IMG/VR virus record: IMGVR_UViG_3300034682_000176
Coordinates: 124,001 to 188,000 of that record
Strand: one strand, 5' to 3'
Length of the DNA: 64,000 nucleotides
Under the pieces are notes generated by a model. That model was not told the origin of the DNA and made no database searches. It saw only the letters and a program-made list of their open reading frames with translations. The first letter of the stretch is position 1, and each line of letters begins with the position of its first letter. A program made the position numbers and the translations under genes. This document shows, piece by piece, positions 13,783-18,599 of this stretch.

Positions 13783-13800
13783 TACATATATACCTAGTGA
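13783..13800 (+). promoter_or_regulatory. putative early promoter motif
   Basis: tacatatata-ccta-gtga, upstream of the operon containing the nvRNAP subunit. Confidence 0.65.
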
Positions 13801-13832: not shown

Positions 13833-15326
13833 ATGCCCGTCAACTTTATTGCTCGTGCACCACGCATTATTGGAGCTTACCTGACCGACCATGCCAAAAT
13901 AGCCCCTGTGCAAAAAGAGCAGACCTTTTGGGCTGCCGATGGAGAAAAGTATCTGCCCGTGTTGAATCTGTTCAAACTCGACGATCGGGCCGAGTTGATG
14001 TTGTCCGATGTGGACAACCCTGCCAACGACATCGAAACGTTCAATGGCAAGGATGTGCGTTACAACCTCAGCAAAAGTGTCATCAACAAAAAGCGTTTGG
14101 ATGTCCACGCTGGTGACCTGTTGATCGGTGGTGTGCGCATGGTGCTCAACTTCATGGACCAGCCTGTGACCATGAAGACGCGTTCCGACATCCCCAAGCT
14201 GTTCATGCCGCTTGTCAACGAGCAATTGAAGGAGTGGCGTGGCAAGTTGCTGATCTTGAGCTTTCACTCGTTCAATGTTCCGCAGACCATCAAGGAGTTG
14301 ACTGGCATTGCCAATTACTTCGAGAACCTGCGGTTGGAGAAAATCCAAAAGGGTGAAGGTAAGACAACCCCTGCACGGATGCTGGAGTACTTGAGCCGTT
14401 GCTGGCAATCGTACAAACCTGAACAAGCCGTCAACGTCATCTCCAATTCCATCAAACTGGCTATGGTGCACGAGTACCAGCCCGCCGACTTCATGTCAGG
14501 CGGGCTGGAAGTGGAAGATGTGTTTTGCAACGAGAGCGGCATGAGCTTTCGACGTTCAGCCAACGTGCTGGAAGTGGCAACACATCCCAAGCACAATGAC
14601 ACATTGCTGGCCAACCGTCAGATCGTGCAATCCATGCGCGAGAATGGTATCTCTTGCTTTATCGTGGACAACGACAAGCGCTTGAGTGAGCGGTTTATCA
14701 ACTTCGTGGGTAGTGTACGTAAGATCCCACAAGTGGTAGACTTTGAGCGCCCTGAGGGTTTGTACATCACCACCGTTGACGGGCAAAAGAGCTTGGGCGC
14801 CGATGCCTTCATCCCACTGGCTGATATCGACAGCTGCCGCTATATCTACAAGTCCCACGAGGAGGCGTTAGAAGGCACAGATGTCCGTCAGCAAGCCCAG
14901 CAGCACCACGAGCTGAGCAAGCTGGAGATGAGTGTTGAAGCAGCCCAGCTACAGCAACAAGCCCTGAAAATGCGTCACGAGTTTGAACAACAGACCATGA
15001 TTATGAAACAAAGTTTCGATGAACAAATTCGCAACATCGAAATTGACTCTAAACGCCGTCAGATGGAGCAAGATGCGTACATCCGGGATATGGAAACCCG
15101 CCACCAAGAAGCACTGCGTAACTTCAAGATCCAAGAGGAAGCCAACAAGTTCCAAGCCAACAGTGAAAAATTCCGTTTTGACCTGATAGGTATGGAGAAC
15201 AAGCACAAATACGAAGTAGCCAAGTACGACCGGGACACAACGATTGAAACGTTGAAGACCGTGGGTTCTGTGGCAGGCCTTTTGGCTGGCGGCTATGTCC
15301 TGTACAAGCAGCTGACCAAGAATTAA
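13833..15326 (+). CDS. conserved jumbo-phage protein with C-terminal coiled coil and hydrophobic tail (497 aa)
   Basis: SD aggag; Q/E/K-rich heptads; GSVAGLLAGGYVLY tail. Confidence 0.75.
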   Translation: MPVNFIARAPRIIGAYLTDHAKIAPVQKEQTFWAADGEKYLPVLNLFKLDDRAELMLSDVDNPANDIETFNGKDVRYNLSKSVINKKRLDVHAGDLLIGGVRMVLNFMDQPVTMKTRSDIPKLFMPLVNEQLKEWRGKLLILSFHSFNVPQTIKELTGIANYFENLRLEKIQKGEGKTTPARMLEYLSRCWQSYKPEQAVNVISNSIKLAMVHEYQPADFMSGGLEVEDVFCNESGMSFRRSANVLEVATHPKHNDTLLANRQIVQSMRENGISCFIVDNDKRLSERFINFVGSVRKIPQVVDFERPEGLYITTVDGQKSLGADAFIPLADIDSCRYIYKSHEEALEGTDVRQQAQQHHELSKLEMSVEAAQLQQQALKMRHEFEQQTMIMKQSFDEQIRNIEIDSKRRQMEQDAYIRDMETRHQEALRNFKIQEEANKFQANSEKFRFDLIGMENKHKYEVAKYDRDTTIETLKTVGSVAGLLAGGYVLYKQLTKN

Positions 15327-15375
15327 TTTTGAACTAAGTAAGCCATCTTGTGCTTACAATCCCAAGGAGTCTCAT

Positions 15376-17097
15376 ATGCGTACCTTCGCTGGTATGATCA
15401 AAGACCAAAGCCCTCAGTTCAATCGAGAGGTTGTTGAAGGTCTGACTTACCACCGCTTGAAGTTTGCACTGGAATATCTCGACCAGTTCATCCGTTACAG
15501 CTGCGAAAGCAAGACCCAGACCCATCTGCGGTATCTGGGTTACAAGCAACTCACTCCGCAAGAGGAGATGCGAACGATCTTCAACAAGACGTCCAAGGTC
15601 ACCTACGACATCGCCGAGAACGACATCTACCTGGTGGAGTACTACTTCCAGTATGGTGACAATCCCGAGGTGATGAAGCACCAGTTCTACATCCCGTTTG
15701 CCAACAAGGGCAATGTGATCCACTTCAGCGGCAATCGCTTTTTGGTCATGCCCACGTTGGCCGACAAGGTGATCAGCGTTGGTGACAATGGCATCTTCAT
15801 CAACATCATCACCGCCAAGTACAACTTTGCCCGTTTCCTGTACTCGGTGATGGTGGACGATCGCTACCAGTCGGTGACAGTGATTCATACCGAGCTGTAC
15901 AAGAACCCGTCCAAGAAGGTGCCTGACACCACCAAGGCCAACACCACGGTGATCCATTACCTGCTGGCCAACTATGGCTATGCAAAGACCATGGAGATGT
16001 TGTTGGGCTTTGTGCCGCAACCGGTGTACGACTACGACGGTGGTGACAAGGTCATCATTCGTTCTTCGGGTGTGGCACCTCGGGGCTACATCCAAGACAA
16101 GTCGCTGTACCAACCCAGCAACATCAAGTTCTTGGTGGATGCTGACCGCTACAACGAGAAGGTGCGTTATGTGCTCGGTAACGTCTTGTACGTGATCGAT
16201 CACTTCCCGCAAGCGATCTCGATTTCTGATCTGGACAACGTGCAGATTTGGAGACGCCTGTTGGCAGAGATCATTCACTCGGGCAATCACGGCTTGGCCT
16301 ACTTGCACGAGAAGATCTCGACCCACTACAACGACTTGAACAGCTCGTTTGACACCAACACCATCCGCAAACTGTCGGATGTGGGGGTGACATCCAAAAC
16401 GCTGATGGAGTTGTTGGTCGTGATCTTCGACAAGTACAACACCTGGATCATGCAAGCGGACACCCGCAGCTTGTACCATCGCAAGACCTTGGAGGTTGAG
16501 AGCTTTGTGCTCAAGGACCTGACCAGTGCGATCACCCGGATTGTGCTGGACATCAACAAGGAAGAGCTGCGCATCAATGGCAACAAGCTCGATGACAAGG
16601 CCGTGGAAAAGATCTTCAAGAGCTTTTTCAAGACCCGCATCATCTACATGCTCAAGAAAGAGTCGCACTACGTGACCAGTGTCGAGTACTCTGGGGATCA
16701 CCTGTATCCCAAGAACACCTCGATGATCAATGAGCAGGAAAGCAACCCCGTCAACATCCGTAACGCTGAGGCCACGGTCTCGGAGAAAAAGAAGTTGGTG
16801 GCAAGCATGGCCACGGTAGGTACTCCGTTGGGTATGAGTAAGACCAACCCTACGCCTTTGGCGCGGGTCAGTCTGTACATCATGCTTGACCCAGAAACGG
16901 GTACGGTGCTCCCACATCCGCTGTGGGACCCCATCGTCCAACACACTGATGCGCTGTTGGAAAACATCGCACCCAGTGACTCGGTGGTTCTGCCAACGTC
17001 GGACAACGACGACAGTGCCTTGGATGACGATGAAACCGATGACGACGACGAAATCGGGCAAGAAAACGAGGCTGACGCGACGATCGATTTGGATTGA
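15376..17097 (+). CDS. non-virion RNA polymerase beta-like subunit (phiKZ gp123-like)
   Basis: 573 aa; PQFNREVVEGL, YDIAENDIYLV and P-LADKVIS segments; position just downstream of the capsid gene as in phiKZ. Confidence 0.75.
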   Translation: MRTFAGMIKDQSPQFNREVVEGLTYHRLKFALEYLDQFIRYSCESKTQTHLRYLGYKQLTPQEEMRTIFNKTSKVTYDIAENDIYLVEYYFQYGDNPEVMKHQFYIPFANKGNVIHFSGNRFLVMPTLADKVISVGDNGIFINIITAKYNFARFLYSVMVDDRYQSVTVIHTELYKNPSKKVPDTTKANTTVIHYLLANYGYAKTMEMLLGFVPQPVYDYDGGDKVIIRSSGVAPRGYIQDKSLYQPSNIKFLVDADRYNEKVRYVLGNVLYVIDHFPQAISISDLDNVQIWRRLLAEIIHSGNHGLAYLHEKISTHYNDLNSSFDTNTIRKLSDVGVTSKTLMELLVVIFDKYNTWIMQADTRSLYHRKTLEVESFVLKDLTSAITRIVLDINKEELRINGNKLDDKAVEKIFKSFFKTRIIYMLKKESHYVTSVEYSGDHLYPKNTSMINEQESNPVNIRNAEATVSEKKKLVASMATVGTPLGMSKTNPTPLARVSLYIMLDPETGTVLPHPLWDPIVQHTDALLENIAPSDSVVLPTSDNDDSALDDDETDDDDEIGQENEADATIDLD

Positions 17098-17162
17098 CCG
17101 AACAGTAAGAGGAACCAAACTCCCGTAACCGTTGTACAGCGGGAGTTTGGATTGTGTTCAAG

Positions 17163-17180
17163 CACATATATAAGCAATGT
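17163..17180 (+). promoter_or_regulatory. putative early promoter motif
   Basis: cacatatata-agca-atgt. Confidence 0.6.
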
Positions 17181-17198
17181 ACGACAAGGAGTTTAATC

Positions 17199-18542
17199 AT
17201 GGTACAATACGCAAACCCGCATCCATCCCAACCCCGTAGCCAGTTTGGTAACTACGGGAATCAAGGTGGTCCGCAACCCATGCCGCAAATCGGAACGGTG
17301 ACCACTGGTACCGATGGTCGTCCTTGGGTGATGACTGCTCAAGGTTGGGCGCCTGCTGACCCTCGCATGTTTGCACCACAACCCGGCATGCCTCCGCAAG
17401 GAATGCCTGGCCAAGGCTTTCCTCAACCCGGTCCTGGTTACACAGCTGGTCCTGGTCAAGCTGTGTACCCTTACCCCGGTCAGCCTCCCCAAGGCTACCC
17501 CGTGTACCAACCACCTGGCTCGCAACAGCTGCCGGTGTACAGCGGCGTGCCACAGCCAATGCCGCAAGCAACGGTGTACCAAAACCCCCAAGGCACGCGT
17601 TCGCAAAACCGCTTTGGTGGTGGCAGTCAACCGCAGCCGCAAGCTGCACCACACATGCCTGTGTACACACCTGCACCACAACAACAACCCGCTCAACCAA
17701 CTGCTCAAGGAGAAAAAGACATGCAGCTCATCAGCACCGGCAAGACCACCATGCCCAAGACCATCTTGACCTCGCCCTCGTTCAAGATCGCAACACGCAC
17801 CAACATCTTCAACGATGTCAACGCGGTGGTCTACCCGACCCTGATGATCACAGACTGCCTGGACGAACTGCTGGAGCAGACGATCGAGAACACCGTCAAC
17901 CATGAACGTGCTCCTGCCGCGCTGATCGCCACCGGTGTGGTCGAGATGATCTACCACAAGGCTTCCCAGTCCAAGTACGTGGGCGATCTGTTCCAAGCAG
18001 ATGTCAAGTCGGTGTACAAGGCTTTCAAGACCCACCTGGCCGCGGTCAACAACCGCTACGACCTGGTGTACCTGTCGGCCATCAACGACTTCCTGACGGA
18101 AACGGCCAACGATGTGCTGTACCCGATTCTGGGCACCTACCCCATGATCGACAGCTTCACCGACGACTTCAACGAACTGCTGCGCAGCCTGCGTAACAAC
18201 TGCTCGGCCGAAGTCGAAGACCTGTTCGTCGAGCAGATCAACAACGTCCTGAAGAAGACGGCGGCGAATTTCTCGCTCAGCGAAGAGCTCAGCAAGGTCG
18301 ACACCGAAGAGTCGGCTCCCAAGGAAGCGCCTCAACGTGCACTGATTCCTGCACCCATGCAGATCATCTGCCTGAACTACATCAGCACTGAACTGGGCAC
18401 CCAAGACAACCTGGCCAACATGCTGGGCGGTCTGGCTGACATGATCGACGGCCATGTGGCCTACGTGTGCACGATCGACAAGACGGTCTACAAGGCCTTC
18501 TTTGACGGCGACAAGGTGGTTCTGGATCTGATCCGCAACTAA
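17199..18542 (+). CDS. protein with P/Q/G/Y-rich disordered N-terminus and folded C-terminal domain
   Basis: SD aaggag at the start; second SD aaggag before in-frame ATG 17721. Confidence 0.8.
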   Translation: MVQYANPHPSQPRSQFGNYGNQGGPQPMPQIGTVTTGTDGRPWVMTAQGWAPADPRMFAPQPGMPPQGMPGQGFPQPGPGYTAGPGQAVYPYPGQPPQGYPVYQPPGSQQLPVYSGVPQPMPQATVYQNPQGTRSQNRFGGGSQPQPQAAPHMPVYTPAPQQQPAQPTAQGEKDMQLISTGKTTMPKTILTSPSFKIATRTNIFNDVNAVVYPTLMITDCLDELLEQTIENTVNHERAPAALIATGVVEMIYHKASQSKYVGDLFQADVKSVYKAFKTHLAAVNNRYDLVYLSAINDFLTETANDVLYPILGTYPMIDSFTDDFNELLRSLRNNCSAEVEDLFVEQINNVLKKTAANFSLSEELSKVDTEESAPKEAPQRALIPAPMQIICLNYISTELGTQDNLANMLGGLADMIDGHVAYVCTIDKTVYKAFFDGDKVVLDLIRN

Positions 18543-18552
18543 GCATCACCCA

Positions 18553-18599
18553 GACACACCACAGACCCTTTGCAGGAGTCTGTGGTGTGTTTTTTTTTT
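18553..18599 (+). terminator. intrinsic terminator
   Basis: acacaccacagac / gtctgtggtgtgt plus long T-run. Confidence 0.85.

What the first reader, a model, noticed from the sequence alone, without database searches (positions are those of the whole stretch)
17199..18542. Prion-like P/Q/G/Y domain with a second ribosome start exactly at the domain boundary
Seen: residues 1-174 are low-complexity (PQPGMPPQGMPGQGFPQPGPGY...). An in-frame ATG at 17721, preceded by a strong SD (aaggag), begins the folded C-terminal part. The gene has an early-type promoter and follows the nvRNAP subunit gene. Inference: long and short isoforms are made, with and without a condensate-forming disordered region, which could matter for phage-nucleus organisation.
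Basis: partly seen in the sequence, partly recalled or inferred. Interest (0 to 1): 0.6.

Follow-up and report, generated by a model that had tools for sequence, protein, structure and literature searches.

The report
Compact JADA homolog with nested start
This jumbo-phage gene encodes a short relative of JADA, an essential early protein that bacterial Avs5 immunity senses, and a second ribosome start conserved in its close relatives probably also makes the folded half on its own, without the disordered tail.

Summary
ORF 17199-18542 (447 aa) has a 174-residue P/Q/G/Y-rich N-terminal region. An in-frame ATG at 17721 follows AAGGAG by 8 nt, three residues before the folded domain begins.

The C-terminal 273 aa is a compact homolog of the JADA core (Pa36 gp316 / phiKZ gp124). 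PDB 9RP3 is the only significant sequence and structure match. The gene lies directly downstream of the phiKZ-gp123-type nvRNAP subunit gene, as JADA genes do, and the genome also encodes chimallin.

Comparative evidence supports two products:
- All 13 close homologs keep a start codon at this site (12 ATG, 1 GTG) with an SD-like motif 5-8 nt upstream.
- The GGAG sits in four different codon contexts, and its Gly codon is GGA in 10 of 10 cases against 17% usage overall.
- The site lies in an unusually unstructured stretch of mRNA.
- The upstream region is under purifying selection (dN/dS 0.05), so the long form is real too.

No protein data exist, and the internal start is specific to this clade, not the whole family.

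"Prion-like" is doubtful. The region is 22% proline and carries conserved short motifs (YxNPH, NRFGG), so it looks like a motif-bearing tether. A role in condensates or the phage nucleus is speculation.

The parts
15376..17097 (+). Upstream gene: non-virion RNA polymerase subunit (phiKZ gp123 homolog)
   Evidence: phrog_2943 at E 6.5e-83. tblastn hits in 188 jumbo phages, including phiKZ gp123.
17115..17150 (+). 12-bp hairpin between the nvRNAP subunit gene and this gene (terminator-like, weak U tract)
   Evidence: Fold energy -21.7 kcal/mol, z -3.3, and 0 of 200 shuffles fold as well.
17164..17172 (+). Phage promoter-like motif ACATATATA
   Evidence: 19 copies on the + strand and 0 on the - strand of the genome, mostly intergenic and after hairpins. 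Also present upstream of the homolog in L019. Its temporal class was not determined.
17186..17191 (+). SD (AAGGAG) of the long form, 7 nt before ATG 17199
   Evidence: AAGGAG at 6-8 nt is kept in all seven full-length homologs scanned for it. L019 carries the same motif before its first ATG.
17199..18542 (+). Full ORF: long form, 447 aa (compact JADA-like protein)
   Evidence: Family of 84 representative clusters.
17199..17720 (+). Disordered P/Q/G/Y-rich N-terminal region, residues 1-174; truly coding
   Evidence: Composition. pLDDT below 35. dN/dS 0.054 against L003, with 25 of 30 differences at third codon positions.
17208..17222 (+). N-terminal short motif Y-A-N-P-H (family motif [RY][YF]xNPH)
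   Evidence: Present at the N-terminus of 60 of 70 full-length family representatives. Invariant N6 P7 H8 in alignment A3.
17286..17363 (+). Small predicted three-stranded beta module (G-x-D-G-R-x-W...T-x-x-G-W), residues 30-55
   Evidence: pLDDT about 75 within an otherwise unconfident model. Invariant G37, D39, G40, R41, T46, G49, W50 in the close clade. Found in only 1 of 70 distant representatives.
17607..17621 (+). Short motif N-R-F-G-G (family motif [NGS]R[FY][GSQT])
   Evidence: Invariant R138, F139, G140, G141. Present in 56 of 70 family representatives and in AgentSmith gp61. It lies upstream of the internal start, so the short form would lack it.
17707..17712 (+). Internal SD (AAGGAG), 8 nt before ATG 17721
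   Evidence: GGAG is kept 5-8 nt upstream in 12 of 13 homologs, with AAGGAAG in the thirteenth, and in four codon contexts. The Gly codon is GGA in 10 of 10 cases against 17% usage overall. Unpaired in the MFE fold.
17721..18542 (+). Nested ORF: proposed short form, 273 aa, the JADA-core dimerisation domain
   Evidence: AF2 pLDDT 94.1. 9RP3 is the only significant PDB hit: HMM E 1.1e-8, Foldseek E 2.5e-9, VIA-align Z 12.1 with model 11-272 matching JADA 420-721. Predicted homodimer ipSAE 0.84 against 0.00 for the best control.
18552..18599 (+). Intrinsic terminator (hairpin plus T10) ending the transcription unit
   Evidence: Fold energy -28.6 kcal/mol, z -6.7.

Best explanation
The gene encodes a compact member of the JADA family. 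JADA (Pa36 gp316, phiKZ gp124) is the essential, early, abundant protein of nucleus-forming jumbo phages that always follows an nvRNAP subunit gene and that Avs5 defence systems sense.

The protein has two parts. The C-terminal 273 residues form the conserved JADA core (equivalent to JADA 420-721), which is predicted to dimerise. The N-terminal 174 residues form a disordered P/Q/G/Y-rich tether that carries conserved short motifs: YxNPH at the very N-terminus, a small beta module, and NRFGG.

The mRNA probably starts at the ACATATATA promoter-like element and ends at the terminator at 18552-18599. It offers ribosomes two strong, unstructured start sites in the same frame. Initiation at 17199 gives the 447-aa long form. 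Initiation at 17721 gives a 273-aa short form that is the dimerisation core alone.

Shown here: the homology, the fold, the synteny, the coding status of both parts, and the nucleotide-level conservation of the internal SD-start. Inferred: that the short form is actually made. Also inferred: because both forms share the dimer interface, long-long, long-short and short-short dimers would carry two, one or no motif-bearing tails. That would set how strongly the core is tethered to whatever the motifs bind.
For: JADA homology:
- A profile of 86 family C-domains hits only 9rp3_A (Gp316/JADA) in the PDB, at E 1.1e-8.
- hhalign against phiKZ gp124 gives probability 94.9, E 4.6e-8.
- Foldseek's only significant PDB hits are 9rp3_A/B, E 2.5e-9, TMq 0.56.
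- VIA-align gives Z 12.1 with 239 residues aligned; the next best is Z 4.8.
- The 23 significant BFVD hits are all 620-980-aa jumbo-phage proteins; those with a name in the table are from chimallivirus-type phages.
- The gene order MCP, gp122-like, nvRNAP gp123-like, this gene, portal-like is the same as in phiKZ, RP12 and Goslar; RSF1, PhiEaH1, PCH45 and Miami share the part of it that their loci cover.
- The genome has chimallin, phrog_4795 at E 2.6e-53.
- Predicted homodimer: ipSAE 0.84, best of 3 controls 0.00. The mark was reached by 20 of 30 solved pairs and 1 of 23 single chains. Runs agree in at least 84% of contacts, and partner pLDDT is at least 88.

Internal start:
- The start codon is kept in 13 of 13 homologs of 41-96% identity (12 ATG, 1 GTG).
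- GGAG lies 5-8 nt upstream in 12, and AAGGAAG in the other.
- It is encoded as GGA-GAN, GGA-GCA, ACG-GAG, or shifted by one codon, while the flanking residues vary.
- GGA is used in 10 of 10 cases against 17% of Gly codons overall, although dS exceeds 1 between most pairs.
- GGAG density is 0.0032 per nt.
- The 60-nt window around the internal start is among the least structured 1.4-8% of windows in 7 of 7 genes.
- Public gene callers picked the internal start in 8 of the 12 database homologs.

Long form is real: dN/dS of the N-terminal region is 0.054-0.34. It has its own AAGGAG-ATG in every full-length homolog examined, and its motifs are conserved family-wide.
Against: - No protein, ribosome-profiling or transcript 5'-end data exist. 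RNA-library contigs only show that relatives' sequence spans the whole gene.
- The internal Met-SD is confined to one clade. In the wider compact family, Met near the boundary is under-represented (30 of 69 observed, 53.9 expected).
- Distant long JADAs are inconsistent. phiKZ, PS119XW, 201phi2-1, PhiPA3 and Noxifer have an SD-start late in the linker. Psa21, RP12, RSF1, PhiEaH1, Goslar and Miami do not.
- Met175 could be conserved for structural reasons.
- The 13 sequences are related, so counts overstate independence.
- Similarity to JADA covers only residues 420-721 at about 14% identity. Function may therefore differ.
- The dimer prediction may reflect the model's memory of 9RP3.
Confidence: 0.6

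Rival explanations
1. Only the long protein is made in meaningful amounts. Met175 is conserved because it matters for the fold or the dimer arm. The GGAG is a by-product of a conserved Gly-Glu/Asp at an acidic junction. The internal 'start' is a look-alike or an evolutionary relic of an ancestral gene start onto which the tail was later fused.
For: Residues 4-23 after Met175 lie in the predicted dimer interface. The junction is acidic in the wider family, which favours GAG and GAA codons. The internal Met is not family-wide. The sequences share ancestry.
Against: GGAG survives where the amino acids change (G-A in L013, T-E in L012 and L019, shifted by a codon in L007). The synonymous third base of the Gly codon is fixed as A in 10 of 10 cases against 17% usage, while dS exceeds 1. 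The one Met replacement is GTG, still a start codon. The first 5 residues are disordered in the model. The mRNA is open at this site in 7 of 7 genes.
Confidence: 0.22
2. The internal SD-like sequence acts during elongation rather than initiation. It would pause ribosomes at the boundary between the disordered tail and the folded core, to aid co-translational folding or dimerisation. Alternatively, the internal start is mainly insurance that keeps the essential core expressed when ribosomes stall on the proline-rich tail.
For: The SD lies exactly at the domain boundary. The tail is 22% proline with many PP and PPG-type stretches. Both ideas rest on general knowledge and were not tested here.
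Against: A pause function does not explain conservation of the start codon at a fixed 5-8 nt, nor its replacement by GTG. SD-induced pausing is itself disputed in the literature (my own knowledge). The insurance variant still requires internal initiation, so it is a sub-case of the main model.
Confidence: 0.1
3. The real gene is only the short ORF (17721-18542), as many public gene calls have it. On this reading the upstream 522 nt is an untranslated leader or a separate element.
For: Gene callers started at the internal ATG in 8 of the 12 database homologs. In L004, L005 and L006 they even called an antisense ORF in the upstream stretch.
Against: The upstream frame is open and in phase in all seven loci that reach the first ATG intact and in the four contig-truncated ones; only L021 has a stop within its upstream frame. 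It has its own AAGGAG-ATG. It shows 25 of 30 differences at third codon positions and dN/dS 0.054. It carries peptide motifs conserved in 56-60 of 70 distant family members.
Confidence: 0.03

Closest known systems
[quoted passage not shown]
   Same: Gene position directly downstream of the gp123-type nvRNAP subunit on the same strand. A C-terminal fold for which 9RP3 is the only significant PDB match. A predicted homodimer. A Q/P/G/M-rich disordered segment immediately before the core. A genome that encodes chimallin.
   Different: 447 aa instead of 620-980 aa. It lacks JADA's folded N-terminal domain (1-170) and the first part of its C-domain (270-419). It has instead a fully disordered tail with YxNPH and NRFGG motifs. 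About 14% identity. No PHROG or Pfam hit, and not found by tblastn in phage records. The conserved internal SD-ATG is not described for JADA: a search of the paper's text found no mention of isoforms, truncation or an internal start.
In-frame nested genes made by internal translation initiation (for example T7 gene 4A/4B, E. coli ClpB 93/79 kDa, IF2 alpha/beta, CheA long/short; from my own knowledge)
   Same: One ORF with two SD-start sites in the same frame. The short product lacks an N-terminal module but keeps the oligomerisation core, so mixed oligomers are possible.
   Different: Here the omitted module is a long disordered low-complexity tail, not a folded domain. No protein evidence exists yet.
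Prion-like or low-complexity domains (yeast Sup35 N-domain, FUS-type LCDs)
   Same: Low complexity, few charges, Q/G/Y-rich with regularly spaced aromatic residues (16 in 174), and predicted disorder.
   Different: 22% proline and only 3% asparagine. Proline is generally unfavourable for amyloid-type prion domains (my own knowledge). The region contains position-specific conserved motifs and is under purifying selection. No PLAAC score or phase-separation test was run.

Membership tests
JADA (Pa36 gp316 / phiKZ gp124) | [quoted passage not shown] | tested here: met
   The window gene starts 101 nt after the phrog_2943 / gp123-type subunit gene on the + strand. The arrangement is the same in AgentSmith, phiKZ, RP12, RSF1, PhiEaH1, PCH45, Goslar and Miami. 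The paper states this context is invariant.
JADA (Pa36 gp316 / phiKZ gp124) | C-terminal domain with the fold solved in 9RP3 | tested here: met
   HMM E 1.1e-8, the only PDB hit. Foldseek E 2.5e-9, TMq 0.56. VIA-align Z 12.1, rmsd 4.6 A, 239 residues aligned, model 11-272 matching chain 420-721, with the next best at Z 4.8. Only the distal three quarters of the solved domain is covered.
JADA (Pa36 gp316 / phiKZ gp124) | Homodimer through the C-terminal domain | tested here: met
   Prediction only. ipSAE 0.84 against a best control of 0.00. The mark was reached by 20 of 30 solved pairs and 1 of 23 single chains. Runs agree in at least 84% of contacts, and partner pLDDT is at least 88. The result may reflect memory of 9RP3.
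JADA (Pa36 gp316 / phiKZ gp124) | Folded N-terminal domain (residues 1-170) joined by a disordered linker | tested here: not met
   The N-terminal 174 residues are low-complexity with pLDDT below 35, apart from a 25-residue beta module. No similarity to gp124 residues 1-170 was seen: hhalign matches only 526-614. A disordered Q/P/G-rich segment before the core is shared.
JADA (Pa36 gp316 / phiKZ gp124) | Encoded by nucleus-forming (chimallin-encoding) jumbo phages | tested here: met
   phrog_4795 (nuclear shell protein) matches at E 2.6e-53 at G000:196452-198263. The genome is 224.8 kb with terminal repeats.
JADA (Pa36 gp316 / phiKZ gp124) | Early, abundant, essential; localises to EPI vesicles; activates Avs5 | not testable with these tools
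   Known only for Pa36 and phiKZ (PMC12931631, PMC12571901). The host of this phage is unknown.
Nested in-frame isoforms by internal translation initiation | In-frame start codon with an SD at functional spacing in accessible mRNA | tested here: met
   AAGGAG, 8 nt, then ATG. Both SD and AUG are unpaired in the MFE fold. The window is among the least structured 1.4-8% in 7 of 7 homologs.
Nested in-frame isoforms by internal translation initiation | Start signals conserved beyond what the protein sequence requires | tested here: met
   13 of 13 close homologs keep the signals, in four codon contexts. GGA is used in 10 of 10 cases against 17% usage overall. This does not hold in the wider family.
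Nested in-frame isoforms by internal translation initiation | Two protein products detected | not testable with these tools
   Only Logan contigs of RNA libraries were available. They cannot show starts or proteins.
Prion-like domain (PLAAC-type) | Q/N-rich, low-charge, low-hydrophobicity composition compatible with amyloid-type or condensate self-assembly | tested here: inconclusive
   Q 17.2%, N 2.9%, G 14.4%, Y 5.7%, charged 5.7%, but P 21.8%. PLAAC itself was not run. Conserved motifs and purifying selection point to specific binding.

The most novel reading that the evidence does not exclude
The two nested products co-assemble through the shared JADA-core dimer interface. The ratio of long to short form would then set how many motif-bearing disordered tails each dimer carries: two, one or none. 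That would tune the formation or dissolution of the JADA focus at the early-infection vesicle or early transcription site. The scattered SD-starts late in the linkers of phiKZ-group JADAs (for example phiKZ Met292) may be the same device. This would be a translational valency switch in an essential jumbo-phage early protein whose core alone is the Avs5 trigger.
Probability: 0.12. Interest if true: 0.75.

Novelty: new variant of a known kind. Interest (0 to 1): 0.5.

Why it matters
JADA was described only recently, and its function is still unknown. It is essential, early and abundant, and its C-domain alone both triggers Avs5 immunity and is toxic.

This finding extends the family to a large, unannotated group of compact proteins (84 clusters at 50% identity). 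It defines the minimal conserved core, equivalent to JADA 420-721. It also shows that a disordered Q/P-rich segment in front of the core is a family-wide feature, and that in the compact proteins it carries two conserved short motifs that are candidate docking sites.

If the internal start is used, this clade naturally makes the core-only form. That bears on how the protein is regulated and on what Avs5 actually sees.

It is also a practical annotation warning. Public gene calls truncate most members of this clade at the internal start.

Tried and rejected
- Pfam and PHROG scans of the long and short proteins gave nothing. tblastn of the C-domain against 50,697 phage records gave nothing.
- An IMG/VR scan with the close-clade alignment found no relatives.
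- Full-length AF2 with 7 sequences was poor (mean pLDDT 35). The C-domain folded well only with the 86-row alignment.
- My first idea, that the gene was the neighbour of gp68 and so PicA/Imp1 (phiKZ gp69), was dropped. The upstream subunit matches gp123 and the fold matches JADA.
- A single-sequence search for chimallin failed. The family profile succeeded.
- RNA-library contigs (X15, X16, X17, X7) span the gene in strains about 95% identical. They cannot show transcript ends, strand or translation starts.
- The sigma-70 and terminator consensus scan was uninformative and missed the obvious terminator.
- I tried to generalise the internal start to the whole family and failed. Met near the boundary occurs in 30 of 69 representatives against 53.9 expected. 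Long JADAs are inconsistent.
- A second recurrent SD-start at the M[DN]Y motif (phiKZ Met405 and others) maps near the point equivalent to window Met175. Its SD is not consistently conserved and it lies inside the solved domain, so I make no claim about it.
- The 'short gene only' reading was rejected on dN/dS.
- The apparent split of the PhiPA3 ortholog into two genes is a probable C6-homopolymer frameshift in the record, not biology.
Full report
**1. What is in the sequence**

The window is bases 124001-188000 of a 224,810-bp virus record with direct terminal repeats.

On the + strand an ORF runs from ATG 17199 to the stop ending at 18542, encoding 447 aa. AAGGAG lies at 17186-17191, 7 nt before that ATG.

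Residues 1-174 are P 21.8%, Q 17.2%, G 14.4%, Y 5.7%. They include 10 charged and 16 aromatic residues.

An in-frame ATG at 17721 (Met175) follows AAGGAG (17707-17712) by 8 nt. GGAG occurs only twice in the gene. No other in-frame ATG has a properly spaced SD.

The gene is a discrete unit:
- A 12-bp hairpin at 17115-17150 follows the upstream gene.
- The motif ACATATATA lies at 17164-17172. It has 19 copies on the + strand of the genome and none on the - strand.
- A strong intrinsic terminator lies at 18552-18599 (-28.6 kcal/mol, z -6.7).

The upstream gene (15376-17097) is an nvRNAP subunit (phrog_2943, E 6.5e-83) and corresponds to phiKZ gp123.

**2. What the protein is**

Pfam, PHROGs and tblastn against phage records gave nothing.

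The word search found nine metagenomic homologs. The exhaustive profile search found 84 representative clusters. Most are 400-480 aa, with the conserved domain at the C-terminus and a 130-200-residue Q/P/M/N/G-rich N-terminal region.

With an 86-row alignment the C-domain folds confidently (pLDDT 94.1, pTM 0.89).

The link to JADA rests on several independent results:
- The family profile hits one PDB sequence only, 9rp3_A 'Gp316/JADA', at E 1.1e-8.
- hhalign against phiKZ gp124 gives probability 94.9.
- Foldseek's only significant PDB hits are 9rp3_A/B, at E 2.5e-9.
- VIA-align gives Z 12.1 with model residues 11-272 on JADA 420-721. The next best is Z 4.8.
- BFVD returns 23 significant hits, all 620-980-aa jumbo-phage proteins; those named in the table are from chimallivirus-type phages.

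JADA is described in bioRxiv 10.1101/2025.07.08.663546 and Mol Cell 2026 (PMC12931631). According to that work:
- It is an essential, early, highly abundant Chimalliviridae protein.
- It is invariantly encoded directly downstream of an nvRNAP subunit.
- It forms a C-terminal homodimer.
- It localises to early-infection (EPI) vesicles.
- Its C-domain alone activates Avs5 and is toxic.

Knock-down of phiKZ124 strongly perturbs phage transcription (PMC12571901).

The window shows the same synteny: MCP, a gp122-like protein, the nvRNAP subunit, this gene, then a portal-like protein. RP12 and Goslar show the same order, and RSF1, PhiEaH1, PCH45 and Miami share the part of it that their loci cover. 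The genome also encodes chimallin (phrog_4795, E 2.6e-53).

A C-domain homodimer is predicted. ipSAE is 0.84 against a best control of 0.00. The mark was reached by 20 of 30 solved pairs and 1 of 23 single chains. Runs agree in at least 84% of contacts, and pLDDT is at least 88. This may be partly memory of 9RP3.

The protein is thus a compact JADA relative. It has the core and a disordered segment in front of it. It lacks JADA's folded N-domain (1-170) and the 270-419 part of its C-domain.

The closest cultured relative is Bacillus phage AgentSmith gp61. It is a full-domain member (probability 99.9) with a Q-rich tail.

**3. Is the N-terminal region translated, and is it 'prion-like'?**

It is translated. 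Against the 96%-identical homolog, 25 of 30 differences fall on third codon positions and dN/dS is 0.054. The ratio stays at 0.17-0.34 in more distant pairs where dS is measurable. The seven homolog loci that reach the first ATG intact keep the in-phase upstream ORF with its own AAGGAG-ATG; four others are cut by the contig end and L021 has a stop within its upstream frame.

The region is not featureless:
- The extreme N-terminus carries [RY][YF]xNPH in 60 of 70 full-length family representatives.
- A [NGS]R[FY][GSQT] motif (NRFGG here) occurs in 56 of 70.
- The close clade adds a small G-x-D-G-R-x-W...G-W module, predicted as a three-stranded sheet with pLDDT about 75.

phiKZ gp124 has a compositionally similar Q/G/P/M-rich linker.

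The tail has 22% proline and specific conserved motifs. The best reading is a flexible tether bearing docking motifs. Self-association through its spaced tyrosines is possible but untested.

**4. Is the internal start real?**

Thirteen distinct homologs of 41-96% identity were examined at DNA level.
- All keep a start codon at the site: 12 ATG and one GTG.
- Twelve keep GGAG 5-8 nt upstream. The thirteenth has AAGGAAG.
- The motif is written in four codon contexts: GGA-GAN (Gly-Glu/Asp), GGA-GCA (Gly-Ala), ACG-GAG (Thr-Glu), and shifted by one codon. The neighbouring residues vary.
- Where the residue is Gly, its codon is GGA in 10 of 10 cases, although GGA is only 17% of Gly codons in these genes and dS exceeds 1 between most pairs.
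- The 60-nt window around the site is among the least structured 1.4-8% of windows in all seven genes tested, comparable to the true first start. Both SD and AUG are unpaired in the MFE fold.
- The model's first five residues after Met175 are disordered, and residues 4-23 already contribute to the dimer interface. The start sits at the boundary.
- Public gene callers chose this start in 8 of the 12 database homologs.

This is good comparative evidence for a functional second initiation site, but it is not proof. RNA-library contigs from wastewater span the gene and say nothing about starts.

**5. Limits of the claim**

The internal start is clade-specific. In the wider compact family, Met within -15 to +5 of the domain start occurs in 30 of 69 representatives, against 53.9 expected from the Met-rich tails.

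Among long JADAs the picture is mixed.
- An in-frame SD-start late in the linker is present in phiKZ (Met292, GGAGG at 7 nt), PS119XW, 201phi2-1, PhiPA3, Noxifer and perhaps PCH45. AgentSmith has one at Met145, right after its NRFGSGG motif.
- None is present in Psa21, RP12, RSF1, PhiEaH1, Goslar or Miami.

I record this as a lead, not a result.

**6. Mechanism proposed**

One mRNA has two SD-starts in one frame. The long form is tail plus core, and the short form is core only. Because the dimer interface lies wholly in the core, mixed dimers would carry two, one or no tails. This would tune attachment to whatever binds the YxNPH and NRFGG motifs.

Rival explanations, with my probabilities:
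- Only the long form matters, and the SD-Met is a structural or relic feature (0.22).
- The SD acts as an elongation pause or as insurance against stalling (0.10).
- The gene is the short ORF only (0.03, contradicted by dN/dS).

**7. Novelty and verdict**

Internal initiation producing nested isoforms is a known device (T7 4A/4B, ClpB, IF2; my own knowledge), and JADA is a known family. Three things are new:
- the recognition of a large compact JADA-like family;
- the family-wide tail motifs;
- a conserved internal start that would yield the core-only form.

I rate it a new variant of a known kind, with moderate interest. Its isoform inference is supported but unproven. Its prion, condensate and nucleus reading is speculative.

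Noticed in passing
window 17164-17172 and 18 other sites genome-wide (for example window 5384, 13784, 40078, 50882, 63362): The motif ACATATATA occurs 19 times on the + strand and never on the - strand of the 224.8-kb genome. Most copies are intergenic, follow hairpins, and have a conserved TTT-rich stretch upstream and a (G/C)TGA(C/T) a few bases downstream. It is likely a phage-specific promoter class. It is AT-rich like jumbo-phage early promoters, but its temporal class is unknown.
   Followed up: partly
G000:C1:196452-198263 (outside the window; locus L018): The genome encodes a chimallin (nuclear shell protein) homolog, phrog_4795 at E 2.6e-53. A single-sequence search with phiKZ gp54 missed it. 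This divergent AgentSmith-like phage is therefore probably nucleus-forming.
   Followed up: partly
window 17208-17222 and 17607-17621; proteins P0012-P0094: Two short linear motifs are conserved across the compact family despite unalignable low-complexity sequence between them. They are the N-terminal [RY][YF]xNPH (60 of 70 representatives) and [NGS]R[FY][GSQT] (56 of 70), about 30-50 residues before the core. The junction just before the core is acidic in many members.
   Followed up: partly
L015:10361-10363 (phiKZ gp124 Met292) and equivalents in L022, L023, L024, L025, L001: Several long JADA orthologs carry an in-frame SD-start late in the disordered linker. Examples are phiKZ with GGAGG at 7 nt, and PS119XW, 201phi2-1 and PhiPA3 with (A)GGAG at 9 nt. 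Noxifer has AAGGAGG followed by GTG, and AgentSmith has one at Met145. Six other orthologs lack one. A second recurrent SD-start lies at the M[DN]Y motif (phiKZ Met405), near the point equivalent to window Met175.
   Followed up: partly
L022 (PhiPA3 NC_028999 125935-128041): The PhiPA3 JADA ortholog is annotated as a truncated gp140 plus an antisense 'gp141'. The reading frame shifts at a C6 homopolymer (GATCCTCCCCCCAGCG). This is most likely a sequencing error in the record.
   Followed up: yes
L003-L008, L012, L013, L019-L021: Public gene calls start 8 of the 12 database homologs at the internal Met. In L004, L005 and L006 an antisense ORF is called across the P/Q-rich region. The N-terminal tail of this clade is therefore mostly missing from protein databases.
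   Followed up: yes
window 17193-18455 (- strand) and 15334-17118 (- strand): Long antisense ORFs (420 and 594 aa) mirror the real genes. They are by-products of the codon and GC bias, not genes.
   Followed up: no
window 13833-15326: The gene upstream of the nvRNAP subunit encodes 497 aa, with a coiled-coil-like C-terminal half and a hydrophobic C-terminal tail. It has weak PHROG hits (phrog_7727, phrog_7286) and occupies the position of phiKZ gp122. Knock-down of phiKZ gp122 also perturbs phage transcription (PMC12571901). It has its own ACATATATA motif at 13784.
   Followed up: no
window 16903-18298 in runs X15 and X16: Wastewater metatranscriptome libraries contain contigs about 95% identical to this locus. 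They span the end of the nvRNAP subunit gene, the intergenic region and most of this gene. The differences fall mostly on third codon positions. DNA carry-over cannot be excluded.
   Followed up: partly
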